Shown here: positions 6,501-62,218 of the stretch, one piece after another
How positions within the stretch are numbered: the stretch's first letter is position 1
Layout: each line of letters opens with the position of its first letter
NCBI GenBank assembly: GCA_051294905.1
Contig: CM119374.1
Span: forward strand, 17,360,001-17,424,000
DNA length: 64,000 nucleotides
Origin: Botryllus schlosseri
Taxonomy: Eukaryota
Direction of reading: 5' to 3'
Position numbers and translations under genes: made by a program
Notes under the pieces: generated by a model
Databases searched by the model: none
What the model was told of the DNA's origin: nothing
The model's input: the letters and a program-made list of their open reading frames with translations, nothing else

Positions 6501-9500
6501 CACCTCTTTTCGGCGGGATTAATAAGGAATTTGACATACCATATCCAGCATAGCCTGTGCGAGTGTGCGTACATTACCACCTATTTTCTGCGTTATCATT
6601 AATGACTTAAACAACGCCTACAAGTGCATTCAATTTGCTGCATAGGCGTCTGATAAGTGCCAAACATAACCGGCTGATTCCGCCGATCCCTAAAGCATTC
6701 AAAACGTCACCTATATACAACAGCTTCAGCCAAATAAGATCACACAAAGTATAGTGTCATTGTTAAGCATTATATATTTGTATTCACTGATGACGGATCC
6801 GTACTGAAACGGTGAATTCGCTCAACACTTGCATAGGCGCCTTTACTTTATCTCGATGAAAACACGGCATGTAGGCTTCAGCCGTTTCCTTCACAATAAA
6901 GCAGTCATGCTGTAAAAGCTTCTGGTAAGCAGGTGTTGTTTGTTCATCATGTATTTCGTAACTCAACATGTCCTGAATTAATCTTGAATCATCACCTGCC
7001 AAAATACTAACAATGCCCACTCAGAATCCCCGCCGGTAGCAGACTTCTTGAACACCTAATCAGCAAACTGCTGCTGCCGTGACCATTGAAGCATAGCCGA
7101 TTAACCAATCAAGAGCCGTTGTTATTTGATTACTAGTCTTCTCGCCGTTCTATGGTCGGTGGCACGCCCATTCTTGAGCAGCTACTTTCAAACGCTTTGA
7201 CCGAAATCTTAACGGCATTTCTGTTAGCTTCTTTCAGGCTAATTGTTGTTTTTTATCAATAATCTATAGAATGAGACACAATCACGGAGACTTTTTAAGA
7301 TTTTCCAAATTTTGGACAACCCTAATGGGCATACGGTTCTATATCAAATGATATTCCTCTGTTGAGAAGCCCAAAACTGCAACTGGAGATGCTGTAGCCT
7401 GTAGTAGATGAATTTCTTTTCGAAAAGGCTCCGACAGGGAAGAAGCGGAAAGGGAAGAAGAAGAGGAAGTTCTGGCGATTCAACGGAGGCTCGCTTTGCA
7501 AATCGATGAGGATGACTTTGATTTGGATATGTTAAAGGTAGATTTTTAGATACTGTCTAAGTAGTGATCGATGTTGCTTGGGCACAAGAACTTAAGATCT
7601 CATCGGAAGGTTTCATATTATCCGTTGTGTCTCAATTGCTGGATATCTGATACCAGTGTTGGGATTAAGTCACCGCCTTCGAGTCGTGTAAAGTCACTAG
7701 ATTTTTTGAGGTGACTCTTGTCAAGTCACAAGACATGTCGAATTTTGAAGCAGCATTTTGCAAGATGATTGAGTCTCTATTAATTCTGAATCAAGTAACG
7801 AATATCGAGTTAAGTATGCCTTCAACGGGTCATTGTGTGGCTCACATAGACCTAGATCTACTAGGTCACGTCGATAACTGTCCGCCAAATAGATAATAGA
7901 ACATGAAGCTTCAGAATGTTGAAACAAATTGATATGGTGCAGTACACAATCCACCTACACATCCATACGATATAATTTTAGCCTGTACCCTGTGCCAATT
8001 GTTGAGCAGTACAAAGTAATAAAGCAGTCCGATTTTAATTATGCAAGAGGTTCGTTAAGATTAGTACATTCAAAATGGGTCGCGTCATGAGAGTGAAGAA
8101 TTTCAATTTGTTTGAGTGAGGTTTAGGAATTGAACTGGATTTAGACTGTCACTGATTTGACGCTCGTTACTTTAAATGCGTCGTTAGTATGACACTCTAT
8201 ATTCTGAATGGCTAGCTAATATGACATACGAGCTAACGCAAGCTCTGTCACGAGTGCAACTGCTTTAATCAGTGTGGAAGTTAAAGTGAAAACAAATTAA
8301 GGGTTTCATCCGTGGTTGTCTGTGTCTCTCTCTCCTGTAGGCATAGCATTTTCTGTTAGTGATTGGCCTACCCGATCACATCGGTTATTGTGTGCTTTCT
8401 ACTCCCACAGACGACCGAAAAGACAGAAGACGAATCTGCACCGAAAGAGGTCGTGGAAACGGATTTCAGTTCTCTCTCACGAAAGGCTCAATGGAAGCTT
8501 CTGAAGAAACAGTCACCCGAGCTGGACGGGCTGGTCACCGAGTTCAAAGTGCGTTGTATATTTGTTACGGTATTTGTTTCTTCACCTCCTCGCAATTGTG
8601 AACTGCACCAACTGCATGTACATGTTGAAGTAGTGTCTGTGTTCCTCGTACTATCATACAAGGGTGTGCGAGTTTGACTAGCGCACTGTAGAAATGAAGC
8701 AGTAAAAATGTGGGCCGCATAGATAGGCTGCTCGGTAGTTAAAAGGAATCTGGTAACAAATAAAATTCTTTATCGGACTACGTGTAACAATCCAAAATAT
8801 CTGAAGTTTAATCATGAGTAGCGTGAAAAACAATTGGAGGTTGTCGAATGGATTTGGTCGAGATATTCATGCGCAAAGTCAGTGTATGCATATTTCAAGT
8901 GTTTTTCTCCTTTTTCTCAGGCCAACTGGGCTTGGCTTGAACGCACTTGGCTAAGGCAGGAACCAGGCCTCAAACTATTCGAAATTGTCACTTCTTCCCA
9001 GGCCGCACCAATATTCTCTTCTGGCCTCAGTCCGGATTCTAAAAAATCATGAATCCAAACCTAATCTGACTAAATGTTCACGTTTGGTTATTTCATATCC
9101 AAATCCAATGCTTATCACTAGTGTTAATATACTGAATCGATTTTCTCTATATATGTCTCTCTGTTTAGATACAGCGGTCATCCTCTTTCGTTTGTTTCAG
9201 GAGAAAGTTTCGGAAATGGAAACGGAACTGTGCCCGCTCATGCAGATGATAAGGCAAGGTCTTATTCCGCAGGGCTACGGCTCGGATTTTATAAGTCTCA
9301 AGTACAGAGTCTATCTCGCTTACGTCATGAACATATCGTTCTACCTCATGTTGAAGACGAACAGAACGCCGGTTCACAGTCATCCCGTCATATCGAGGCT
9401 GGTGCAGTATAAGACGGTGAGTGACTGAGTCGTCTCGTGTTTGATCGCAAGGTTTTGATCGTCATAGTTGTAACAATAGGTGGACAAAGTAGTCATCGCG

Positions 9501-29991: not shown

Positions 29992-34765
<4,774 letters not shown>

Positions 34766-42360: not shown

Positions 42361-45300
42361 GTGAATGAGGCAGAAGCCTGGCTGGAATGGAAAAAGAAAT
42401 TCCTGATCTTTATCGATGCAGCAGGTCATGCTGAATCACCTGGGCGCCAGAAAGTTGGATTATTACGGCAATTCATAGGAAAAGAAGGAAAGGAAATATA
42501 CGAGGATTTCGTGTTTGCTGAAGCAGTCGCAGAATCAGACGGTGTGGAAGCAGTTGCAGCAGAAGACAAAACTGACCTTGATACCGTCTTGAAGAAGTTT
42601 GATGAACGTTTCAAGTTTCGGGATGGCAGGTTTGAAGCACACCTTCAATTCTTCCATTTCTTACAACGCAAAGAGGGTGAATCATTTGCATCTTGGGTAC
42701 ATGCAGTCAGAAAGGCTGCACGAAAATGCCAATTTCCTCCAGCAGTGTACGACGCAACCGTTCGGGCTAAACTTATTGTCGGGTGCGTAGATGATTCTGA
42801 GATGTTGTACAAGCTATCGGAAATCGACTTTGACAAGCTAACGTCTCAGAAGATTATCGACGTTGTGACTACACAGGAGACGAGACGGAGCTATGCTGAT
42901 CGGAGATCTGCACCTACAGCAATAGAAGCGGTGGCCAACAAAGCGAGACCTCAAACTTTTAAGAAGCCTGCAGTTGAAAGTGTGCCTGTAATAAACTGCA
43001 CATTTTGCGGTCGACGACACAAAAGAGGCATAGGGTTCTGTCCAGCAGCCTCAGTAAAATGCTACAGATGTGGTAGAACGGGCCATTATAAGGAAAGGTG
43101 CAGAAGTAGAAATGTACGCGTGCTGGATAGCGAAACGATTGAGGAAGAACCAAGCGCTGAGTGTTATGACGAGGAAGAACTTCCAGACGCAATGTGTGGA
43201 AGTGTGGGCGAAACCCAGGAAGCAGAAGCATCGGTAGGTTCAGCACAGGCTACTAAGACTATCCAGTGGACTATCATGTTGAGAGTCGTTAACAACACTC
43301 TGAAATGGATTGTTGACTCTGGAGCAGAAGTGTCTGTCATGCCGCGGCGATTGTACAAGAGACAATATGGGCCTATACAGAAATCTGATAGACGGCTCAT
43401 TGGAGTTAATCGACAACCTCTCAATACTGTTGGTTTTGTACGGATGAAACTCAGCTCCGACTTCAAGGCGTTAACAGAGAAAGTCTACATTGTATCGGAT
43501 GCGGATAAGCTACTCCTTGGCGCTCCTGCTATACTGGAACTTGGACTTCTTCAAGAGTGCCAGGATGTTCAAGTATCCATCAGGGCCGTCAAACTTACCC
43601 CTGAGAGTCGTTTGCGGAGCAAAGATGACGTCAAGAAAGCATACCCAGAGCTATTCAAAGGCATTGGCAAACTGGGAGAGCCGTTTACTATTCACATGAA
43701 AGACGGCGTTGAGCCCTTCTGTTTGAATTTGCCACGTCGTGTGCCAATCCCATTGCGCCAGAAACTCAAAGAGGAGATAGATAAGCTTGAAGAGCTCGGT
43801 ATCATAGAAGAAGTGACGGGACCTACAGATTGGTGTGCTCCAATCGTAGTCGTAGCCAAACCAGACGGAAAGGTGCGACTGTGTGTAGACCTAACCAAGC
43901 TCAATAATGGGGTAAAAAGGGAGCTGTACCCTATGCCTACAGTCGAAAGCACTTTGGGGCAACTGTCAAAGGGGACGGTCTTCACTAAGCTGGACGCAAA
44001 CTCTGGATTTTATCAAATTGAGCTCTCCCCTGAAAGTCGAAAGTTGACAACGTTTATCACACCGTTTGGGAGATATCAATTTCGTCGCTTACCACAGACT
44101 TGGACAACTAGAAAATTTTCAGCTTTTCTGAATTAGATTAGAATTAGAATTAGAGCTCCACAGTTTTATTCAAACTAGATTAGAATTAGAATTAGAGCTA
44201 CACAGTTTTTTCCAAATTAGATTAGAATTAGAATTAGAGCTACACAGCTTTTCTCAAATTAGATTAGAATTAGAATTAGAGCTACTAAGCTTTTTCCAGA
44301 TTAGATTAGAATTAGAATTAGAGCTACTTAGTTCGCAGAAACTTGGAAATTGAATGAAATTGTATATGGGAAATGAATACAGCAAAATGCAGTTCACATC
44401 AAATCACAGTGCGTGGTGCAAAAGGCCGTGAGGCGATAAGCACCACATATTTTTGTTTAATAAACAACAACAACAGTGCATTCCCATAACCATGAGAATG
44501 GTTAACTTCTGTACACCAAGCTTGGCTCGATTTTTACTATACTTTAATGAAATATTACTTCTTTTATGGTAACCGTGGGCATCGCCCATGTTAGTCAGAA
44601 TGGCGATGTACTAACGTAAGGTTTTAGAAACTAGAATGTTGTTCGCAGACTACAAGCTACTCTAGCAGGCTATTGTTCGTCATAATATCTACTATGACTG
44701 CACGGTGTAAGTAAGGAGATGGCGGCTTGGCACTGGATTTCCCTGCGCAAGAGGGATATTCTTTTTAACTCACTGCAATAGTACAATATGCCTCGGACAA
44801 AGAGGAATTTTCAGGAAAACAATAATTAGATTAGAACTAAAATGAGAGAATACGGACATTTCACAAATTAGATTAGAATTAGAATTAGAGCATAAGAACA
44901 TTTCACAAATTAGATTAGAATTAGAATTAGAGCACGGAAGCATTTCACAAATTAGATTAGAATTAGATTACTGGCATTTCGCTCTAATTTAGTGAAATTA
45001 GACAACTAGAATTATCTAGTTGTCCAAGTCTGGCTTACCATTTGGCATCTCGAGCGCACCGGAAGCGTTCCAAAAACGTATCAGTGAAATCCTGCAAGGA
45101 ATCCCAAACGTGATTTGCCATATGGATGACATCCTAGTAGTTGGCACTCAAACTACGCACGATGAGACGCTGAAGGCTGTATTGGACCGTCTAAAATGCT
45201 CTGGCATTACTCTAAATGAGAAGAAATGCATCGTTGCTGCAACTGAACTTGAATATCTCGGTCAGGTCATCGGCCAAGATGGTATCAGCAAAGATCCAAA

Positions 45301-47305
45301 GAAGGTGCAGGCTATTGTGAATTATGCTGCTCCTACTGATAAGACTGAACTTCGCAGGTTCTTGGGAATGGCAAACCAGCTCATGAAGTTTAGCTCCAAC
45401 CTAGCGGAACTGACCAAGCCGTTACGAGAATTGTTGGCGAAGAAGGTTGAGTGGTACTGGGGCCCGTCACAAGAGGAATCGTTTGCAAGAGTGAAACGCG
45501 ATCTGTCTTCCGATGTTACATTAGCTATGTATTGCCCAGACAGGGAAACTGTGCTCTCAGCTGACTCCAGCAGTTACGGCCTTGGTGCCGTTCTGATGCA
45601 AAGACAAGATGACAATAACCTTCGCCCGGTCGCATATGCCAGCAGATCAATGAGCGACAGTGAACAACGGTACGCCCAGATAGAAAAAGAGGCCTTGGCA
45701 ATCACTTGGGCAATGGAGCACTGGAGAGAACTCTTACTGGGTATTGAAGATCTGAAAGTTGAAACTGACCACAAGCCACTAGTGCCTCTGCTCTCAACGA
45801 AATCGCTTGACGAATTACCTGTCAGAATTCAAAGATTCAAAATTAGGCTGATGTCCTATAACTTTGCAATTTTCCACACGCCAGGAAAGTCGATGTACAC
45901 AGCAGACGCGCTATCACGATGCCCTTTGCCGACAACGGATGGCATCGAAGACACCGATCTTCACAAGGAAGCGGAAGCATGTGTGCGTGCTCTGGTCAGC
46001 GGGCTGTCTGCTACTGACCGACGCCTGGAAGAAATAAAGAATGCTCTTAAAGAAGACAAGACACTGTCGACTGTTATGACATATGTTGTTGGAGGATGGC
46101 CAAAGAACAAAGAAACTTTAAATGGACCGGTGCGTATCTTCTGGAATCTCAGAGACGTGTTAACAGTACATGACAATCTCTTGCTAAAAAGCAACAGACT
46201 CGTCATACCACCGCCGTTGCGCGAAGATGTTCTGAAGCACCTTCACCAATCGCACCTTGGAGTAACCAAGACCAGACAACTTGCAGCACAAGCTTGCTGG
46301 TGGCCGGGTTATTCAAAAGACATTGAACATGCAGTACTCAACTGCAACCGCTGTGAAAAGCATCGACGTGATCGAACTGAACCGATGATGGGGACCGAAT
46401 TTCCGACACGCCCATGGGCTAGAATTGCTGCTGATTTTTTCCAACTGGAGGACAAGTACTACCTTTTGATCATGGATTACTACTCCAGAGACATAGAACT
46501 GTTCTCAGTAAAGAAAACGATCTCGTCACGGGACACAATTTCTCACTTCAAGAATGTGTTCTCTCATCATGGCATCTGTGATGTCTTGCTTACGGACAAT
46601 GCTTCGGTCTTCGTTTCCTCTGAATTTTCTCAGTTCTCCAGAGCCTGGAATTTTCAGCACCTCACCTCTTCTCCAAAATATAGCCAGGGCAATGGCTTCA
46701 TCGAGAGAGGAGTACAAACTATAAAGGCCCTGCTCAAGAAAACAGATGATGTCTATCTGACGCTACTGAACTATAGAAACACGCCCTTGCACTCCGGCTT
46801 ATCGCCCGCCCAATTGAGCATGGGACGCAGATTGAAGACAAAGGTGATTTGTCATCCTGACCAGCTACGGCCACAGACTGTTGATGTCGAAGATCTTCGA
46901 AAAAGGGAGACGGAGTATAGACAGAAAATGGCTGCGAGTTACAATAAAAGACATCGTGTGGTTGAGAATGATAGATTCGGAATTGGAGACCATGTATACA
47001 TTCCTGATTGCGAAAGGATGGGTATCATCAAGGAGATGCATGAAAATCCTAGAGCGATCATCGTTGAGACGAACAATGGACTAATGAGGCGTAACCGAAA
47101 ACACTTACGGAAGTACAACCCTCCGGAGGAACCCAAACCATCTGTTCCGCATCAGAATAAACCGGTTGAATATTGTCTTGTAGCGTCGAAGAAACCAGGA
47201 CACCGTCAAGAAGCCAACGGTTCATCTGAACCTACCGGAGAGAATCCCGCGAGACGATCCTCGAGAATTAGAAATCCGCCACAACGATTTATTGAGCAAT
47301 ATTGA
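42361..47305 (+). mobile_element. Ty3/Gypsy LTR retrotransposon gag-pol (single frame, split by a MITE)
   Basis: CCHC knuckle CYRCGRTGHYKERC; protease VDSGAEVS; RT WCAPIVVV / LDANSGFYQI / HMDDILV; RNase H ADSSSYGLGAVL and EKEALAI; integrase HQSH...CNRC with ADFF / TDNA / IERGVQ (DDE). Domain order PR-RT-RH-IN. Confidence 0.96.
44095..45032. mobile_element. 938-bp hAT-type MITE inserted in the Gypsy RT
   Basis: TIR CAGACTTGGACAACTAGA...TCTAGTTGTCCAAGTCTG; perfect TSD GCTTACCA (44087-44094, 45033-45040); TTAGATTAGAATTAGAATTAGAGC subterminal arrays. A partial second copy lies at about 50480-50793. Confidence 0.93.
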
Positions 47306-47527
47306 TCACACACAGGTTTCAAGATCAGGGGCAGAATAATCCCCTAACCTGTTGTACACCTTGGGAGTAGTCTACCTCCCTGGTGACTCTGTCTGTTAAG
47401 TGCAAATGCCCTGCTCTTGCTAACCTTGCAGGGGTAGTGTCACCTTGTATATATTGTTATCGCTGCTGTATTGTGACTTGTATATAATGTAAGTAGTGTT
47501 GATGTCTCTTCCCCTAAAAAAGGGAGA

Positions 47528-47680
47528 TGTGGTGTTATGATATGCTTGATTGATCATGCGATGGGTTTCCGGATTGTTTTGATGACAGACAAGCATGTGG
47601 TCTGGGGGAATACACTTCGAGTGCGACTTGTAAAAGTATCTGTCTAAGTAGACAGCTAGAAGCTTAGTGATAATACTACA
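47528..47680 (+). repeat. 3' LTR of the Gypsy element (about 153 bp)
   Basis: Follows the polypurine tract AAAAAAGGGAGA (47516-47527); begins TGTGG and ends TACA. No matching 5' LTR seen upstream of gag. Confidence 0.65.
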
Positions 47681-48900
47681 ATCATCATCATCATCATCAT
47701 TGGTTTATTAGCAATTTTATCAGTTCAATACACCACAAAAAATGCGATACAATGAATAGACAGGAAGATGTCGAAGCGACTTGGATTTGTCAATGGAATC
47801 GGACACCCACCTTGGCCTAGGCGTAGTAAAGAGGAGGCATGCACACTGAATGGAAGTAAAGAATACAGTATAGAAAAAGAAAGCGACAAGAAATAGGGCG
47901 GCATGTCATGGGAAGCGAGATCGATAGGTCAGTCGTGGTCCGGTAATCTTGAGGATGGACTGTATTTATTTAGTAGTAATTGCTTGTATTTCGACTTGAA
48001 TGTGGACATGCTCGTCGACTGTCGGATGGCCGGCGGGATACTGTTCCACACATCAGGTCCGGCATATTTGATGGAGCGATGATCTTTTCGGTCGATCATA
48101 TGATATTTGGACGACGTGGACGCGCGTGTGTTGTACTTGTGCGCTTTTGATTCAGAGGTAAAGAAGTCATTGAAATATTCGTGGCAACGACCGCAGTGAA
48201 ACTGATACATAAACTTGGCGATTTCTAGTTTCCGCATATCTTCTATGTTTAGGACGCCGAATCTCTTCAGCAGCGACTTATTGGATGGGCAGCCAGGCCC
48301 CTTTGGGGCCCTAGCTATGATTCGGAGCACTTTATGCTGTAGTTTCTGCAGTGGCTTGAGTGCAGTTTTACTGGCAGCCCCCCAACAGAGGATGCCATAA
48401 TGTAACTTCGATTGGATTAAGGATTTAAAGAGTATCAGGAGAACCCAGCATGCTGGCATGAAGCGCCCAAGGCTGTAGAACAGGCCGCACTTCGGTGATA
48501 ATTTAGTTTCTAGGGACTGAATATGACTCTTCCAGGACATGTTCGAGTCCAGTAAAACTCCGAGATATTTGGCATTATCTGTGTTGGAAACGGGCTGACC
48601 AGCGATATTAACGGTTAGGTTATTTTTTGAATTGACTGTCAGCAATTGCGATTTCGAGGCGTTTATGCAAAGGTTGTTCTGGGCCGTCCACTCATGGACT
48701 TTGGGCATTTGGTCACCAGTCAGGGCATCCAGCTCTGCCGTCGAAGATGCGGAAGAGAGGAGGTGAGTATCATCAGCGAACAGTGTGGTGTTCAATGAGG
48801 AGGTTTCAAAAATGTCGTTGACATATAAGGTGAAAAGGACCGGTCCAAGTACTGAGCCCTGGGGCACACCACAGGTCACCGGGTGAGGAGAGGACAAGGT
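47681..48900 (-). mobile_element. 5'-truncated CR1/L2-type LINE with open RT C-terminal frame
   Basis: ORF 48897-47929: GVPQGSVLGPVLF, FADDT, KYLGVLLD, GPDVWNSIP; followed by a 3' UTR, AATAAA and a (TGA)n tail at 47681-47700. Confidence 0.9.
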
Positions 48901-53712: not shown

Positions 53713-54368
53713 ATCAAGCTTTGTCCGGACAAAATCTCCTGAATTGACTGCTATAACAAGCTCCACGTTAACCGAGTACAAAAAGACAACTGTTGCACGA
53801 TGTTCCAGTCACGGTGGGAAGCCAGCTTCAAAACTGACATGGATGAATGGCACAACATCAATGACGGGATCAGACACTGTCGTGACGGTTAACGCATTTA
53901 AAACCTATCTGAATGACTCTCATAGAGACCTGGTAATAGAGTCTCTTTCTCGTTATGATCACAACCGAGTATTCTCATGCAAAGTTGAACACCCTTCGTA
54001 TGAGGCACCGAAAATTCTAAATTATTCAATCCTTGTCATGCACCGTCCGTATAACATTCGAATATGGGCCAATGTCACATCGAAGATTATCTATTGCAAA
54101 GCAGAAAGCTACCCTACCCCCACATACTGGCTTTACTGGACCTTCTCACTATATAGCTGGCCTGTTCGATATTCCAGGCAACGACATATTTGAACGTACT
54201 GCTGAAAATGGGCTCGGTCCAGATGTCTCTATTCAAGTGACCGTCGATGACCTGCGTTATCCTGACGGAAAACCAGGATTGACTAAATTTCAGTGGCGGA
54301 TAAGGGCTGTCATGGTGAGTGCAGTATTACTTGGCATTATAATCACCATCACACAGAGAGTGACGTGA
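53713..54368 (+). pseudogene. Immunoglobulin-superfamily (nectin/CADM-like) fragment: two Ig-like domains plus hydrophobic tail, with a frameshift
   Basis: ARCSSHGGKPASKLTW...FSCKVEHPS (C2-type Ig) then YCKAESYPTPTYW; frame change near 54130; FERTAENGLG (Arg where Ig domains have Cys); then IRAVMVSAVLLGIIITIT before the stop. Confidence 0.6.
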
Positions 54369-56928: not shown

Positions 56929-58750
56929 CATATAACTACTCCGCTATGCCCATAAACATGATTTATTTGATACCATAGCATGAATTGTTTTATTACCATG
57001 GGGAATATTTGGCACAATAACTGATGAAGCAACGGTTTTGCACCGATTTAACAACACTGTTATTATGAAATACGGGTAGTTAAATTCAGGCGGATTCACA
57101 ATTGTGGTGTAAAGTTGTTTTTTCAGTTAGTGTAAATTCAAAGGCCAGCCCTTGGCGTATTTCCAGTCAAAAGTTAGTTAATCGAATATACATAGGTATT
57201 TCTTGAACCTACAATTTATTAAGAGATGTGTAAAAGTGTGAGTCGAGTATTCGAGTACCAATGATTATGATGTCGGACTGGGAAATTTCAAATACCTTGC
57301 ATTCGTGCAACTGCAAATAAAATGATGGACAATTACACCATACATTGATTTAGCACTTGCGACCATATCAATTTGTGGTGATATTATGAAAATGCTGAAT
57401 TGACTTGAATCGTTCTAAAGTTGAGTAGGCCTACTCAAATCATTGTGCCCAGCCTTTCTGGCTGATAACTGAGATTTGAACACTTACGTATTGTTGACTT
57501 GGACCTGGACTCGACCTTTCACAGACTCACACCATTACTCGACTTGACATTGTGTAATTGACCAGAGTCAAAATTTACAGTCGGAGAATGTCTTGTGAGT
57601 TGGAACTTTTTGCAACCTGGTAAATTCAAGTAGGCCTATGATAAATTTAAGCCTGTGAATGACGCCACAAGTCCATGACTAACAGTAAGGATATTGCCTT
57701 TTCGGAGATGGATATTTAGTGGTGAGCGGAAGAAACTTGCAGTGACATGAGAATAATTTCATCGACTCACGGCAGTAGAATATTTTTTTTATGGCTTCAA
57801 TAGGCCACACTGTCATGCACAACACTAGATAATAAGGCTCAACAATGTTGTGTAGTGTGTCACCAATGGTAATTTGTACAAGATATGCAAACAAGTTATG
57901 TCAGCCTGTATGTTATGAACTTACAAAGACCAGAGAGAAAGTTTTTGATTTAGAAGACTAGGGTCTCCCTGATCAGTTAAAATGAATAACTGTTGGGCGT
58001 TAAAGCAAACGGGTAATATGCAGTAAGCACACCTTTGGACAATGTGATGTTATTTGTGCTCACTATGTCTAATAACTCTCAATTTTTATTCTGATTGAGC
58101 CTTTAGTAAAGTATATTTTGACTAGTTACACTTATGCTTTGACAGAATTTAAAGCGAGATAAGCTACTTCATTGATTTTGTAAGATATAAATTATTCTAC
58201 CGACAGGATTGTGTCATTTTTATAAGTAAAATTGTCATGTATACCTCACTACACACCGGCCTCATTCAAATTCTTTATCAATCGGTTCTATCACAAATGT
58301 CATATTTTTCAGTCAGTTTATGCTACAAAAATGTCATTGATACTAACCAGTATTGATAACTGGTTTGCTCATAAACTTTCGTGAGATAGCTCTATAGAAC
58401 TGGCTGCATCTGACCACAGGCTCTATGACGGTATTAGAATACAACTTTGTATTTGACCTATTGTATAGCACCACTATTCATTTTAGGCTGGTTACAAAAG
58501 TGCACGTCACAGTTTTGAAATTAGCCCCTGCAGCACGGTGTTTTCTAGGATTGCGCCTGTGTATATTGTATATATAGTATCATTATTTGTAGCAACTCTA
58601 CTTTTGAAAACTACTCACCTGAATATTTTTGAGACCTCGATTTTCTACTTCCACTGGAAACAGTATAGACATGTCTTAAAATTTACTACTTCTACTTGTA
58701 GTTCAGCGAAAATCCACAGTATTTCTTCTAGTTCTGCTTGAGTACCAACA

Positions 58751-60657
58751 ATGACTACTTCGACCACCTGTGTGGAGTACAGTGCCGAGTGCGTCCTTGT
58801 GGGGGACGAAGCTGTCGGTAAGACATGTCTCGTGCTGTCTTACTGTACCAATAAATTTCCATTGGAACATGTACCAGTGGCACAATCTGTAAGCTCCGCC
58901 AAACTAGTGTTCTTGTTTTTCGCATAAGTCAAGTATGCGATTGCTCATGCAGGTTCTTGGCATGAATTACTGCCCAACGGTGATGTGCGAAGGGGGAAGG
59001 TGTAGAATTCGATTGCTGGATGTGCGGGGTAAGATGCGTTTCAATTTGCTGCGAGTACAATAGGTTGGTAATAACGTGCTTACAATCACAGTCTGTAGTC
59101 AAAGGTGGCCAAAGTAGTTAACATTGCTATTGAAAGCGACACTGAGCTCTAAAAATTATGTGGTCTCAAATTGCAGGGCGAAACGAAAAACTTGGCCGCA
59201 GCCATTTCCTTTAGAACGCCATGGTAATGGAGCCGCGATTTATTGAAATTTTCACAGCACCTTCGCGCTCCAGCTGTTGTGGCTGCACATCATTCCTTAA
59301 CCCGCTACATGGCACGATGTCTTCACCGCCGCACTTGCGCGACGCGATTAGGCAGTCACGCAGGGAACGAACTTTAGATAGTTGTCAGCCGATGTTATGA
59401 AGGAAATATGTCAACAACTATCAAAATTTTGTTCTCTGCATGACTGCCTAATCGCGACGAGAGCAGCCGCGACAGCTGGATGCGGGGGAAGAAGAGCCCA
59501 GATAAACCTCCAACAAAGAATCGAATCCAGGCCGGGTAGAACGCACTTATCGTCATCACTACACTAATTCCCCCCTATTACACTAATTCAAGTAAACTGT
59601 AGAATTTCACTTGATTAGTTTTTGTCAATTAACCACGACTACATTTGACAAACCCAATCAATGTCAATATTAAACACATCCAACACATATGAAACCTCTC
59701 TATTATCTAGCTGAATTTTGTCAATACAGGTACCGACGAGTACGAGAGACTGAGACCGTTATGTTACCCTCGCTCGGATGTGTTTCTGATGTGCTTTTCC
59801 GTTGTCGATCCATCGTCATTTGAAAATATCACAGAGAAGGTGAAAACTATTATACATTCTCATTTTCCTATTGCACTTCCAGATACTGAAAATGTGTTTC
59901 GCGTCCAGTGAATTTTTGATTTTTTTTTTTGCTAGAAAATTTTGTATTCACTTGTAGAGACGGCCAAGTGGGCAGTAGAAATTCAAGTAATGTTCAAAAC
60001 ATCCTTTCCAAGACATGTCAGAATCACTATTAAAATTGCAGGATGGGTTTCCCCAATCAAATCAAAATGACGTTACAAATATACTCATAAATATATAAAT
60101 TTTCAAAAATATATTCAGTTACTGTGACACAGGGACCATTTCACCAGTTTTCATGATAATACAAACTCCAAAGTGTAAAAAGTATGTAAATAATATATCA
60201 CTAAGATATAGTAGTGTCACTTGACCACATAGTGGTAAAGGAAAAAAATCAACTCGAGCTTTTCTTTGGTTGGCCACTTTTAAGGCGTTGCAATCATTTT
60301 TAGTGGATTCCAGAAGTACAAAGTCACTGCCCCAACACTCCATTCATTCTTGTCGGCACAAAAACTGATTTACGGGAAGACAACGCTACAATTGAAAATC
60401 TATTGAAGAATGATAGAACTCCCATTTCTCAAGAAGATGGTGTCAGACTTGCCAAGGACCTGGAAGCTGTGAAATACTTGGAGTGCTCTGCACTAACAAT
60501 GGTACGCATGGATTCTAGGCCAACTGCATTGACTTGAAATACTTCGAGTATGAACCTTGGTGTTGGTTTACAGGTTGGACTGAAGAATGTGGTTGACGAG
60601 GCGACCAGGGTAGCTTTACTACCTCCCAGAACAGTAAAGAGGTGTAATATAATGTGA
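58751..60657 (+). CDS. Divergent CDC42 paralog (atypical Rho GTPase), 5 exons, about 201 aa
   Basis: Exons 58751-58888, 58953-59028, 59730-59839, 60304-60501, 60574-60657 share CDC42's intron phases and its 110- and 198-nt exon sizes, with an open frame. Sequence: [34 protein letters not shown]|[25 protein letters not shown]|[17 protein letters not shown]...GTKTDLRED...ECSALTM|[27 protein letters not shown]. Confidence 0.9.
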
Positions 60658-62218
60658 TATCTCATTCAGTTATCTATTATTTATTGTCTATATCAGGGCC
60701 CATGGGTCGCAACCTTTTGTATGCCAAATATTTTCGTACAAATTTGACAATGAGACCTTATCTGGCCGGCCCAGAACAATGCATGGCTACTTAAATGTGT
60801 TTCAGGAATTTTATCTGCTTACTGCTGCTTATCCATAATTTATTTTGCTAAAGTTAGGACTTATCTCTGCCATAAAAGTAAGCTATTTTTTTCAAGTTCA
60901 ATTAGTCTGCATGCAATATTGTGATCCTTGGAGTACAAATTATGTTCAACTTCTTCATATGTGTGAATACTTTTTAACCAATCTATTGCGCCTTACAGCC
61001 TGTATTTCAATCCCGGAACCTACTGTCAAGAAAACTGATACTATAAAGAACATCAGTCTGTAGCGTTTTGGCATGTCCGTATAATGGCTGGCCATAACAG
61101 TTTTCAAGGGATTTAACATTCCATGATTAATGATCTCGTATGTCACCATTGTCTCCATCCATTTTACCATCTATAGAGTTTTATATATACTGATTACTCC
61201 GAGGTGATACAGTTACTTGCAAAAGTGAAGTGCCACCCACATTCATTCTATGCAGTAAACTTTTATCGTATTGCTTTCCCGCCGGTTTTGGTTTGTTACT
61301 TTTGTATTATGACAATTACACTTCTTTATTATTACAATTATGCTAGGCGAGAAATTGCTGTTTTGAATAAATTCAAATTTTAGACAACGCTGGTCTGGAA
61401 TTCAATCAAGAACAGCGAACATCTTAGTCTGGTTAGTTAGAAAGGGCTTATTTATAATGCCGAAGCCATGACTGGTTTCCACAGAATAAAAACTACGAAC
61501 GTGCTCGACCAGATCGGGGATCGCAAGGTTCCACCACCCAATTTACGATTACCGAAATAATTGTTCAATTGTCAGGTTATTTCAACTTGATAAGGTAATA
61601 ACGGGACCCCGTCCCAATAAGTGTGCGTTCCTTGAAACATTAAAGGTAGATAGACAAAATGAGTCGCTTTCCTACGCCTTTCACCGAAGCTTTTCAATTA
61701 ACACAGGTGTCTAAAAGCTACGGTACTTGATCTCGAGATTGTCAATATTTTGAGATGGAATGCAAATTATGGATCATGATATCATCATTTGCTGGTCATA
61801 TAGTGTCAGGAACAGAAAATATGGTTGGAACTGCACCATTTCGGGGTACCAGTGTCAAGCTCAAGTCATTACCTCGAGTCAAAATTTCAACTCAAGATTT
61901 CAAAGCGAGTGGAATGACGTTATTCCAAATGCCACACTTTTAGACCGAGTGGAGTCGTATGAGTCATAGCTGTTCAGCGTGTTCACGCATTTAATTAAGT
62001 GTCGGTGGTCAGAGTTGTATTGTCGACTCACAATCAGATCGAAATTTTCAAGCATAGCTTGTGTGGTTTTGAATATGAGTCACAATTCCGTTCGTGTTGA
62101 AGGCAAATGCAAGTCGAGTTTATTGCCCCTGGAACGATCTCGATACACCATCTCCAATCTGACAAACTGGAACGCTCCACCGAAATCTACATCATCGAAG
62201 ATTGCACCCGTAAATTTC

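What the first reader, a model, noticed from the sequence alone, without database searches (positions are those of the whole stretch)
58751..60657. Tandem CDC42 duplicate converted into a predicted GTPase-deficient atypical Rho protein
Seen: intact ORF, same strand and intron pattern as CDC42 24 kb upstream, C-terminus (KRCNIM) closest to the distal exon. Changes fall on the catalytic positions: G12E (GDEAVGKT), DTAGQ to DVRGT (T58V, A59R, Q61T), Y32H, about four extra residues in switch I around T35, and TQxD to TKxD. GKT, CSAL and the CaaX box are retained. Known: substitutions at 12, 59 and 61 abolish hydrolysis in oncogenic mutants and in the natural atypical GTPases Rnd1-3 and RhoH. Inference: an independently evolved, constitutively GTP-bound (or pseudo-GTPase) Cdc42 derivative with altered effector specificity, regulated by expression rather than GEF/GAP cycling. 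Divergent Rac/Cdc42-like genes have been reported in Ciona as I recall, so novelty needs checking.
Basis: partly seen in the sequence, partly recalled or inferred. Interest (0 to 1): 0.8.

Follow-up and report, generated by a model that had tools for sequence, protein, structure and literature searches.

The report
Catalytically disabled tandem copy of CDC42
Next to an ordinary CDC42 gene sits an old, still intact and transcribed copy that keeps the residues needed to hold GTP but has lost those needed to hydrolyse it, so an always-on Rho protein of the Rnd/RhoH type probably arose here independently from Cdc42.

Summary
A five-exon, GT..AG-bounded ORF (58751-60657, +; 606 nt, 201 aa) lies 24 kb downstream of a canonical CDC42 gene. 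It has the same intron positions and phases as CDC42. Its last exon descends from CDC42's distal alternative exon.

Third-codon-position identity shows it came from CDC42, not Rac. It is single-copy in the 495.5-Mb genome.

The nucleotide-binding boxes are kept: GxxxxGKT, DxxG, TKxD, CSAL and F28. G12 is E, Q61 is T and A59 is R. T35 is lost inside a four-residue switch I insertion. The CaaX box changes from CNIL to CNIM, which predicts farnesylation, as in Rnd proteins.

RNA data show three of four splice junctions and the acceptor of the fourth.

Past purifying selection is supported. Synonymous divergence is about 0.9 with no stop or frameshift. Changes avoid Cdc42/Rac-invariant positions (p = 3.5e-8). 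Pairwise omega is 0.26 for exons 3-5.

Several points argue for caution. The N-terminal third evolves near-neutrally. Both coding SNPs seen are nonsynonymous. One sample carries a hAT transposon insertion in exon 1. No ortholog was found in two protein collections. No biochemistry exists.

Verdict: probably a lineage-specific, GTPase-deficient atypical Cdc42 paralog (about 0.55).

The parts
58600..58750 (+). 5' UTR (at least this long), with an in-frame TGA at 58739
   Evidence: An X6 contig runs colinearly from before 58600 to 58806. Upstream stop and Kozak A at -3.
58751..58888 (+). Exon 1 (46 codons). Contains an 8-residue N-terminal extension, the P-loop GDEAVGKT (G12E), F28 kept, Y32H, and three extra residues where T35 should be.
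   Evidence: Pfam Ras, E 5.5e-7. Donor GTAAGC at 58889. The exon 1-2 junction itself was not seen in reads.
58781..58788 (.). Target site (AGTGCCGA) of a polymorphic non-autonomous hAT insertion seen in run X1, at codons 11-13
   Evidence: An X1 contig joins the exact TIR end ...TATATATCCCTG to 58781. The element has 32-nt TIRs and 8-bp target duplications; its 30-nt TIR-end pattern has 336 matches in the genome.
58953..59028 (+). Exon 2 (25 codons + 1 nt). Contains the remodelled end of switch I, the beta2-beta3 hairpin with three new Cys, and DVRG (DxxG kept; T58V, A59R).
   Evidence: X6 contig 10 starts exactly at 58953 after 9 letters that do not lie on the intron. No intron 1 depth in X6 or X22. 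No DNA-level alignment to CDC42 exon 2.
59340..59561 (.). Repeats inside intron 2: a palindromic MITE-like hairpin (about 59350-59448) and a 30-nt piece (59482-59511) shared with an abundant tRNA-like or SINE RNA
   Evidence: k-mer depth of several hundred to several thousand in this interval, and loose ends on both sides. Weak sub-threshold mir-191 hit (27 bits against a gathering score of 54). No tRNA found.
59730..59839 (+). Exon 3 (Q61T, then the well conserved switch II helix and beta4)
   Evidence: Junction 59028/59730 seen in an X6 contig and 2 raw RNA reads of X22. Pfam Ras. 76.9% nt identity to CDC42 exon 3.
60304..60501 (+). Exon 4 (66 codons). Contains the G4 box TKTD, the complete Rho insert, and the G5 box CSAL.
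   Evidence: Junction 59839/60304 seen in X1 and X6 contigs and 2 X22 reads. Best solved-structure matches are Cdc42. Single copy in the genome.
60574..60657 (+). Exon 5 with stop codon. Short basic stretch and CaaX box CNIM.
   Evidence: Junction 60501/60574 seen in X1 and X6 contigs and 2 X22 reads. Derived from the distal CDC42 exon.
60658..60800 (+). 3' UTR (continues beyond 60800; first AATAAA at 61366)
   Evidence: Contigs of X1 and X6 and reads of X22 cover it. Poly(A) signals.
29995..34765 (+). Parent gene: canonical CDC42. Exons 29995-30099, 30165-30237, 30349-30458, 31888-32085, and alternative last exons 32236-32328 and 34676-34765.
   Evidence: It is 88-93% identical to named Cdc42 proteins.

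Best explanation
This is an old, lineage-specific tandem duplicate of CDC42 that still encodes a folded, membrane-targeted Rho-type G domain.

Shown by sequence:
- The boxes that hold the nucleotide are intact: P-loop GxxxxGKT, F28, DxxG, TKxD and CSAL.
- The residues that drive hydrolysis and the GTP-dependent switch are replaced: G12E, Q61T, A59R, T58V, and loss of T35 within a lengthened switch I.
- The CaaX box ends in Met.

Inferred:
- The protein binds guanine nucleotide but cannot hydrolyse GTP intrinsically or with a RhoGAP. It would therefore sit permanently in one state, most likely GTP-bound.
- It would be farnesylated rather than geranylgeranylated, and so poorly handled by RhoGDI.
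- It would have lost canonical CRIB-effector, GEF and GAP contacts through its remodelled switch I and beta2-beta3.
- It would then be controlled by expression, turnover or localisation, as Rnd1-3 and RhoH are.

The gene appears to be non-essential, because a transposon-disrupted allele occurs in the population.
For: Origin:
- Same strand, 24 kb downstream of CDC42, with identical intron positions and phases.
- Inside the Cdc42 clade, 100 SH-aLRT against Rac.
- Exon 4 third-position identity is 51.5% to CDC42 against 21% to Rac.
- Last exon dS is 0.56 to the distal exon and saturated to the proximal exon.

Reality of the gene:
- Splice junctions 2-3, 3-4 and 4-5 appear in contigs of two studies and in raw RNA reads.
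- The exon 2 contig starts exactly at the predicted acceptor.
- There is no intron 1 depth in X6 or X22.
- An in-frame stop lies upstream of the ATG.

Selection:
- dS is 0.91 and only exons still align.
- There is no stop codon, all indels are multiples of three, and all 8 splice sites are kept.
- In a neutral simulation the ORF stays open in 0.56% to 0.065% of runs.
- 36 of 132 Cdc42/Rac-invariant positions are changed against 40 of 56 variable ones, p = 3.5e-8. For residues 63-191 the counts are 16/83 against 30/43, p = 4.6e-8.
- Pairwise omega for exons 3-5 is 0.26 (CI 0.14-0.47), below the 0.5 expected if the copy were neutral.

Motifs and known biochemistry:
- Motif pattern.
- Substitutions at positions 12 and 61 make Rho proteins GTPase-deficient (PMC6321241).
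- Rnd proteins lack GTPase activity and are farnesylated (PMC4319381).
Against: - No nucleotide-binding or hydrolysis data exist.
- Omega for exons 1-2 is 0.54 (CI 0.22-1.13), which is compatible with neutrality.
- 20 of 49 family-invariant positions in residues 1-62 are changed.
- Both coding SNPs seen are nonsynonymous: G61V and T147S.
- Run X1 carries a hAT insertion in exon 1 and retains introns 1 and 2.
- Expression is low in one bulk RNA run and absent from the sampled part of another.
- The exon 1-2 junction was not observed directly.
- No ortholog or fragment above 66% identity was found in two very large protein collections, so conservation across species is unknown.
- E12 and R59 flank the gamma-phosphate site and could lower GTP affinity.
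Confidence: 0.55

Rival explanations
1. It is a transcribed duplicate in decay. The copy was constrained for part of its history but now has no selected function. The loss of catalytic and effector residues is simple erosion, and the ORF is open by luck or because constraint was relaxed only recently.
For: - Near-neutral omega in exons 1-2.
- 41% of invariant positions in residues 1-62 are changed.
- Both coding SNPs seen are nonsynonymous.
- A hAT insertion allele in exon 1 and intron retention in X1.
- Low or absent reads in bulk RNA runs X22 and X24.
- No ortholog in the databases.
- Terminal branch about 20 times the median.
Against: - Open ORF, in-frame indels only and eight intact splice sites despite dS about 0.9.
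- Changes strongly avoid fold-critical invariant positions (p = 3.5e-8).
- Omega for exons 3-5 is 0.26, below the neutral expectation of 0.5 (p about 0.013).
- All nucleotide-binding boxes and the CaaX Cys are kept while the two catalytic residues are hit.
- Correctly spliced transcripts appear in several samples.
Confidence: 0.25
2. It is functional but not GTP-locked. One possibility is a nucleotide-free or GDP-preferring pseudo-GTPase, in which E12 and R59 pair over the gamma-phosphate site and the protein acts as a scaffold or as a trap for Cdc42 regulators. Another is a protein that still hydrolyses GTP by an unconventional route, for example with R59 acting as a built-in arginine.
For: - Acidic E12 and basic R59 are introduced together next to the gamma-phosphate position (their proximity is from general knowledge of Ras and Rho structures).
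- T35, which holds Mg2+ in the GTP state, is missing.
- Switch I is lengthened by four residues.
Against: - K16, T17, F28, D57, G60, K116, D118 and S158-L160 are all kept. That would be unnecessary for a nucleotide-free scaffold.
- Ras and Rho G12 acidic mutants still bind GTP (general knowledge; Cdc42 G12D is listed in PMC6321241).
- Known natural proteins with changes at positions 12 and 61 (Rnd, RhoH) are GTP-bound.
Confidence: 0.15
3. It is a gene-model artefact. The exons would belong to a larger or different transcription unit, or the ORF would be a chance assembly of CDC42-like fragments.
For: - The exon 1-2 junction was not directly observed.
- X1 shows unspliced 5' parts.
Against: - Three junctions and the exon 2 acceptor are seen in RNA.
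- An in-frame stop lies 3 codons upstream of the ATG, and the only upstream ATG opens a 2-codon ORF.
- Exon sizes and phases mirror CDC42.
- Three exons hit Pfam Ras in colinear order.
Confidence: 0.05

Closest known systems
Canonical Cdc42 (the neighbouring gene at 29995-34765; solved structures such as 1an0, 1grn)
   Same: - 59-60% identical over 189 aligned residues.
- Same intron positions.
- Same G1, G3, G4 and G5 boxes, Rho insert and C-terminal CaaX.
- Direct descent shown at synonymous sites.
   Different: - G12E, Y32H, T35 lost, F37 and D38 changed, T58V, A59R, Q61T.
- 8-residue N-terminal extension and a 4-residue switch I insertion.
- Six extra cysteines.
- CaaX X residue is M instead of L.
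- About 20-fold longer branch.
Rnd1-3 (RhoE), the GTPase-deficient and farnesylated atypical Rho proteins
   Same: - Replacement of the residues equivalent to G12 and Q61 with the nucleotide-binding boxes kept.
- CaaX ending in Met, which predicts farnesylation.
- Expected regulation without a GTPase cycle (PMC4319381, PMC6321241).
   Different: - Rnd proteins are a separate subfamily. This gene derives from CDC42 in one lineage.
- It has Glu at position 12 and Arg at 59, which I do not know from Rnd.
- It lacks the long Rnd C-terminal extension.
- Its function is untested.
RhoH
   Same: A natural Rho protein with substitutions at positions 12 and 61, considered permanently GTP-bound and controlled by expression and modification (PMC8072805, PMC2565660, PMC6321241).
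   Different: RhoH is vertebrate-specific and of different ancestry, and its switch I has normal length. No relationship by descent.
Laboratory and oncogenic Cdc42 mutants G12V, G12D, Q61L and Q61R
   Same: Same positions hit. These mutants are GTPase-deficient and constitutively active (PMC6321241).
   Different: Those are single changes on an otherwise intact effector surface. Here switch I and beta2-beta3 are rebuilt as well, so 'constitutively active Cdc42' signalling through CRIB effectors is not expected.
P0137 group: four environmental eukaryotic proteins of 194-196 aa found here
   Same: Another long-branch derivative inside the Cdc42 clade, with an altered P-loop (GNHIGKT) and switch II (WDLGNGGED).
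   Different: Different substitutions, different unknown organism, and a normal-length C-terminus ending CCLL. This is an independent event, not an ortholog.
   Same: Lineage-specific divergent Rac/Cdc42-type paralogs in an invertebrate.
   Different: Not tested. The source paper is not in the library, and no protein over 66% identical to exon 4 exists in the collections searched.

Membership tests
Rho family small GTPase (Ras superfamily, Pfam PF00071) | G1 P-loop GxxxxGK[ST] | tested here: met
   GDEAVGKT in exon 1. Pfam Ras hit, E 5.5e-7.
Rho family small GTPase (Ras superfamily, Pfam PF00071) | G3 DxxG, G4 [NT]KxD, G5 SA[KL] | tested here: met
   DVRG, TKTD and CSAL are all present and aligned. 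Exons 3 and 4 hit Pfam Ras.
Rho family small GTPase (Ras superfamily, Pfam PF00071) | Rho insert helix between beta5 and alpha4 | tested here: met
   Exon 4 aligns without gaps to Cdc42 residues 97-161, including the insert.
Rho family small GTPase (Ras superfamily, Pfam PF00071) | G2 switch I threonine (T35) | tested here: not met
   VPT-VFD-NY is replaced by VPVAQSVLGMNY. There is no Thr; a Ser lies at the exon 1 end.
Cdc42 subfamily (by descent) | Groups with Cdc42 rather than Rac in a tree, and shares gene structure with Cdc42 | tested here: met
   100 SH-aLRT split from Rac. Intron positions and phases identical to the neighbouring CDC42. Third-position identity 51.5% to CDC42 against 21% to Rac. 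No RhoA, TC10 or Rnd rows were in the tree.
Classical cycling Cdc42 (functional class) | Catalytic G12 and Q61 and an effector loop that binds CRIB and GAP partners (Y32, T35, F37, D38) | tested here: not met
   G12E, Q61T, Y32H, T35 lost, and F37 and D38 changed.
GTPase-deficient atypical Rho proteins (Rnd/RhoH type, functional class) | Substitutions at the positions equivalent to 12 and 61 with nucleotide-binding boxes retained | tested here: met
   The class definition comes from PMC6321241 and PMC4319381.
GTPase-deficient atypical Rho proteins (Rnd/RhoH type, functional class) | No intrinsic or GAP-stimulated GTP hydrolysis; predominantly GTP-bound in cells | not testable with these tools
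   Needs recombinant protein assays.
GTPase-deficient atypical Rho proteins (Rnd/RhoH type, functional class) | Farnesylation through CaaX with X = Met (true of Rnd) | tested here: inconclusive
   The sequence ends CNIM, against CNIL and CSLL in the parent. Prenyl-transferase choice is inferred from the general CaaX rule, not measured.
Rnd subfamily (by descent) | Common ancestry with Rnd genes | tested here: not met
   Synonymous-site and gene-structure evidence shows origin from the adjacent CDC42.

The most novel reading that the evidence does not exclude
This would be a third, independent origin of the 'always-on' Rho design, this time from Cdc42. The gene converged on the Rnd recipe (position 12 and 61 replacements plus a switch to a farnesyl CaaM box). 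It also adds features not known from Rnd or RhoH: a Glu12/Arg59 pair at the gamma-phosphate site, a four-residue longer switch I without the Mg-binding Thr, and a Cys-rich beta2-beta3 hairpin. Together these would give a non-cycling protein with a new partner set that may antagonise or bypass canonical Cdc42 signalling.
Probability: 0.3. Interest if true: 0.6.

Novelty: new variant of a known kind. Interest (0 to 1): 0.45.

Why it matters
GTPase-deficient Rho proteins are known from only a few subfamilies, such as Rnd and RhoH. How a molecular switch evolves into a constitutive signal is usually inferred from deep, unresolved branches.

Here the parent and the derivative sit side by side and are still alignable at synonymous sites. 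The order and pattern of changes can therefore be read directly: which residues went, and which were protected.

If the protein is functional, it offers a natural experiment on three questions:
- What is the minimum needed to lock a Cdc42 fold?
- Is the prenyl switch coupled to loss of cycling?
- How is effector specificity rewired?

If it is decaying, it shows how long a disabled G domain can persist.

Tried and rejected
- **Full-length ortholog search.** I used a scaffold profile instead (P0137 plus exons 1, 3 and 4; alignment A4), and exon 4 alone. Nothing exceeded 66% identity. Alignments A1-A3 were discarded because MAFFT misplaced the short exons.
- **Structure prediction and complex prediction.** Not run, for the same reason. 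They were not replaced by anything.
- **Identifying the organism.** A gypsy pol ORF gave a best hit of 57% with no informative name. Scan notes gave nothing. The organism stays coded. The genome is 495.5 Mb in 219 contigs.
- **X22 reads that leave exon 2 at 59024.** These looked like an alternative isoform. They are a chance short match to an unrelated gene on contig C6. Rejected.
- **The 30 loose letters before 58781 in X1.** These could have been an alternative 5' exon, since they are open in frame. They are the exact end of a repeated hAT element. I read this as an insertion allele.
- **Rac origin or Rac gene conversion of exon 4.** Seven residues are Rac-like. Rejected from third-position identity.
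- **Small RNA in intron 2.** Only a sub-threshold mir-191 hit on a palindromic repeat, and no tRNA.
- **Literature.** No paper describing this gene was found. The Boureux 2007 id that I recalled is not held.
Full report
**Observation**

Reading 58500-61000 and splicing in a script gives five exons on the + strand: 58751-58888, 58953-59028, 59730-59839, 60304-60501 and 60574-60657. Each intron is bounded by GT..AG. The CDS is 606 nt and encodes 201 residues ending KRCNIM-stop.

An in-frame TGA lies three codons upstream of the ATG. The ATG has A at -3, and the only upstream ATG opens a two-codon ORF.

A tblastn of this protein against the window found the parent. It is a canonical CDC42 gene at 29995-34765 on the same strand. 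It has exons of 105, 73, 110 and 198 nt and two alternative last exons, 32236-32328 (ending CSLL) and 34676-34765 (ending KCNIL). Intron positions and phases (0, 1, 0, 0) are the same in both genes. The size differences are all multiples of three: +33 nt in exon 1, +3 in exon 2 and -6 in exon 5.

**Origin**

- The copy is 59-60% identical to the local CDC42 over 189 aligned residues.
- It is single-copy in the 495.5-Mb assembly at G000:C4:17418751-17420657. The next best matches are CDC42 itself, a Rac gene on C5 and a four-copy Rac-like cluster on C14.
- In a maximum-likelihood tree it falls inside the Cdc42 clade (100 SH-aLRT against Rac). Its terminal branch is 4.0 against a median of 0.17, and its exact position is unresolved.
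- Exon 4 carries seven Rac-like residues, including K116. DNA settles their origin. Third-position identity is 51.5% to CDC42 exon 4, 21% to the Rac gene, and 27% for CDC42 against Rac. The Rac-like residues are therefore convergent. TKxD is simply the family consensus, not a lesion.
- The last exon has dS 0.56 to the distal CDC42 exon and is saturated against the proximal one. The two CDC42 alternative exons are also saturated against each other. The duplication therefore postdates the alternative-exon architecture and kept only the distal type.
- Only exons 1, 3, 4 and 5 still align at DNA level (71-80% identity). Introns and flanks do not align.
- Overall dS is 0.91, dN is 0.30, and 70 of 114 conserved residues use the same codon. 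This is an old but not ancient duplicate.

**Expression**

One read-laying run was allowed.

- Junctions 59028/59730, 59839/60304 and 60501/60574 are each present in assembled contigs of X6. The last two are also in contigs of X1, which comes from a different study. All three appear in two raw reads each of the bulk RNA-seq run X22, of which only about 6% was read.
- In X22, depth is confined to exons and UTRs.
- The exon 1-2 junction was not listed. However, an X6 contig begins exactly at 58953 after nine letters that do not lie on the intron. The depth in the bin holding intron 1 equals what the first 17 nt of exon 2 alone would give, in both X6 and X22. The acceptor is therefore supported, while the donor at 58889 is inferred.
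- X24 showed no exon reads.
- X1 retains introns 1 and 2.

**A disrupted allele**

In X1 a contig joins 58781 to 30 letters that are the exact end of a repeated element. The 30-nt TIR-end pattern has 336 matches in the genome, mostly in inverted pairs about 3 kb apart. The element has 32-nt perfect terminal inverted repeats beginning CAGGGATATATAG, 8-bp target duplications and no long ORF. This is a non-autonomous hAT-type element.

The reference is the empty site. The X1 animals carry an insertion at codons 11-13, and no X1 contig spans the empty site. The gene is therefore dispensable in at least some individuals.

The two coding SNPs seen are both nonsynonymous: G61V in X1, and T147S in X6 and X22. 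A 9-bp insertion in X6 falls just after the stop codon and leaves the protein unchanged.

**Selection**

- If the copy had drifted neutrally for half of the observed synonymous distance, a CDC42-like ORF would stay open in only 0.56% to 0.065% of simulations. That figure ignores indels and splice sites.
- Changes are strongly non-random. 36 of 132 positions identical between Cdc42 and Rac are changed, against 40 of 56 positions that differ between them (Fisher p = 3.5e-8).
- For residues 63-191 the counts are 16/83 against 30/43 (p = 4.6e-8). In residues 1-62, 20 of 49 invariant positions are changed.
- With an essentially frozen CDC42 partner, a neutral copy should give a pairwise omega near 0.5. 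Exons 3-5 give 0.26 (bootstrap 95% CI 0.14-0.47; 1.3% of replicates reach 0.5). Exons 1-2 give 0.54 (0.22-1.13).

The fold-forming two-thirds has been under purifying selection. The P-loop-to-switch II third evolved at a neutral-like or episodically adaptive rate.

**What the protein looks like**

Kept:
- G10, G15, K16 and T17.
- F28, N39 and Y40.
- D57 and G60.
- T115, K116 and D118.
- S158-A159-L160.
- The whole Rho insert.
- The CaaX cysteine.

Lost or changed:
- G12E, Y32H, T58V, A59R and Q61T.
- T35, together with F37 and D38, inside a switch I that is four residues longer. A Ser sits at the exon 1 end.
- Most of beta2-beta3, which gains three cysteines spaced C-x4-C-x4-C.

Added: an eight-residue N-terminal extension.

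The CaaX box changes from CNIL to CNIM. By the general CaaX rule (established knowledge), a terminal Leu directs geranylgeranylation and a terminal Met directs farnesylation. Rnd proteins are the farnesylated, GTPase-deficient Rho proteins (PMC4319381). Substitutions at positions 12 and 61 give GTPase-deficient Rho proteins (PMC6321241).

The most economical mechanism is a nucleotide-binding but non-hydrolysing, non-cycling, farnesylated Cdc42 derivative with a rewired effector face. This is inference, not measurement. E12 and R59 flank the gamma-phosphate site and could instead disfavour GTP, which is the second rival explanation.

**Comparison and novelty**

Two searches with the gene's exon 4 found nothing above 66% identity: one against 1.84 billion representative proteins and one against the 5.8-billion-cluster collection. 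A scaffold profile carrying exons 1, 3 and 4 returned only the scaffold's own relatives, tandem-fused Rac-like models and canonical Cdc42 or Rac. Because the organism is coded, and its own proteome may be absent from these collections, this shows 'not described there', not 'absent from relatives'.

Published Rho inventories that I could read list single Cdc42 genes for most invertebrates and do not mention such a gene (PMC4669188). The searches did surface another, unrelated long-branch Cdc42 derivative from an environmental eukaryote: the P0137 group, with GNHIGKT and WDLGNGGED. Disabling Cdc42 copies may therefore be recurrent.

I rate this a new variant of a known kind. It is an independently derived GTPase-deficient-type atypical Rho protein, convergent with Rnd and RhoH but descended from Cdc42.

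**Verdict**

Descent, intactness, transcription, past constraint and the catalytic-residue pattern hold.
- GTP-locking, farnesylation and altered effectors are predictions.
- Present-day function is uncertain, given the near-neutral N-terminal third, the nonsynonymous polymorphisms and the transposon-disrupted allele.

Noticed in passing
window 58781-58788; example copy L030:157-3155 (G000:C1:374856-377854): A non-autonomous hAT-type element about 3.0 kb long, with 32-nt perfect TIRs (CAGGGATATATAG...), 8-bp target duplications and no long ORF. Its 30-nt TIR-end pattern has 336 matches in the genome. It is absent from the reference at this site but inserted in exon 1 of the Cdc42-like gene in run X1, so the family has been active recently enough to be polymorphic.
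   Followed up: partly
window 59340-59460: A palindromic, MITE-like hairpin in intron 2 with k-mer depth of several hundred to over a thousand in RNA-run contigs. It gives only a sub-threshold Rfam hit (mir-191, 27 bits against a gathering score of 54). It may relate to the palindromic elements noted elsewhere in this window (s1-278754).
   Followed up: partly
window 59482-59511: A 30-nt piece shared with a very abundant RNA (k-mer depth in the thousands). The flanks of that RNA in the reads look like a tRNA T-arm (..GGGAATCGAACCCGG..), suggesting a tRNA-derived SINE fragment. ARAGORN finds no tRNA here.
   Followed up: partly
window 32236-32328 and 34676-34765: The two alternative last exons of the canonical CDC42 are saturated at synonymous sites relative to each other. 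The dual-exon architecture is therefore much older than the tandem duplication.
   Followed up: yes
P0137, P0151, P0152, P0153; L031:387-971: A separate long-branch clade of Cdc42-derived proteins from environmental assemblies, with a shortened and altered P-loop (GNHIGKT) and switch II (WDLGNGGED). This is an independent case of a disabled Cdc42 in an unknown eukaryote.
   Followed up: partly
G000:C14:19694699-19746976 (L004-L006, L008, L023, L024, L026, L027): A cluster of four Rac-like gene copies within about 52 kb, three on the + strand and one on the -, in addition to a Rac gene on C5 (L003, L022).
   Followed up: no
window 42361-48897: Ty3/gypsy-type retrotransposon ORFs (RT, RNase H, integrase) lie between CDC42 and its duplicate, with a further RT fragment on the opposite strand. 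An Ig C2-set exon lies at 53744-54193 and a Sas10/Utp3 exon at 8985-9428.
   Followed up: partly
window 58751-60657 (protein residues 7, 32, 53, 58, 63, 83): The duplicate has 12 cysteines against 6 in CDC42. Three of the new ones are spaced C-x4-C-x4-C in the beta2-beta3 hairpin. The significance is unknown; it could be redox, metal binding, acylation or chance.
   Followed up: no
window 60653: Run X6 carries a 9-bp insertion (GTGATTAAA) that realigns to just after the stop codon, so the protein end KRCNIM is unchanged in that allele.
   Followed up: yes
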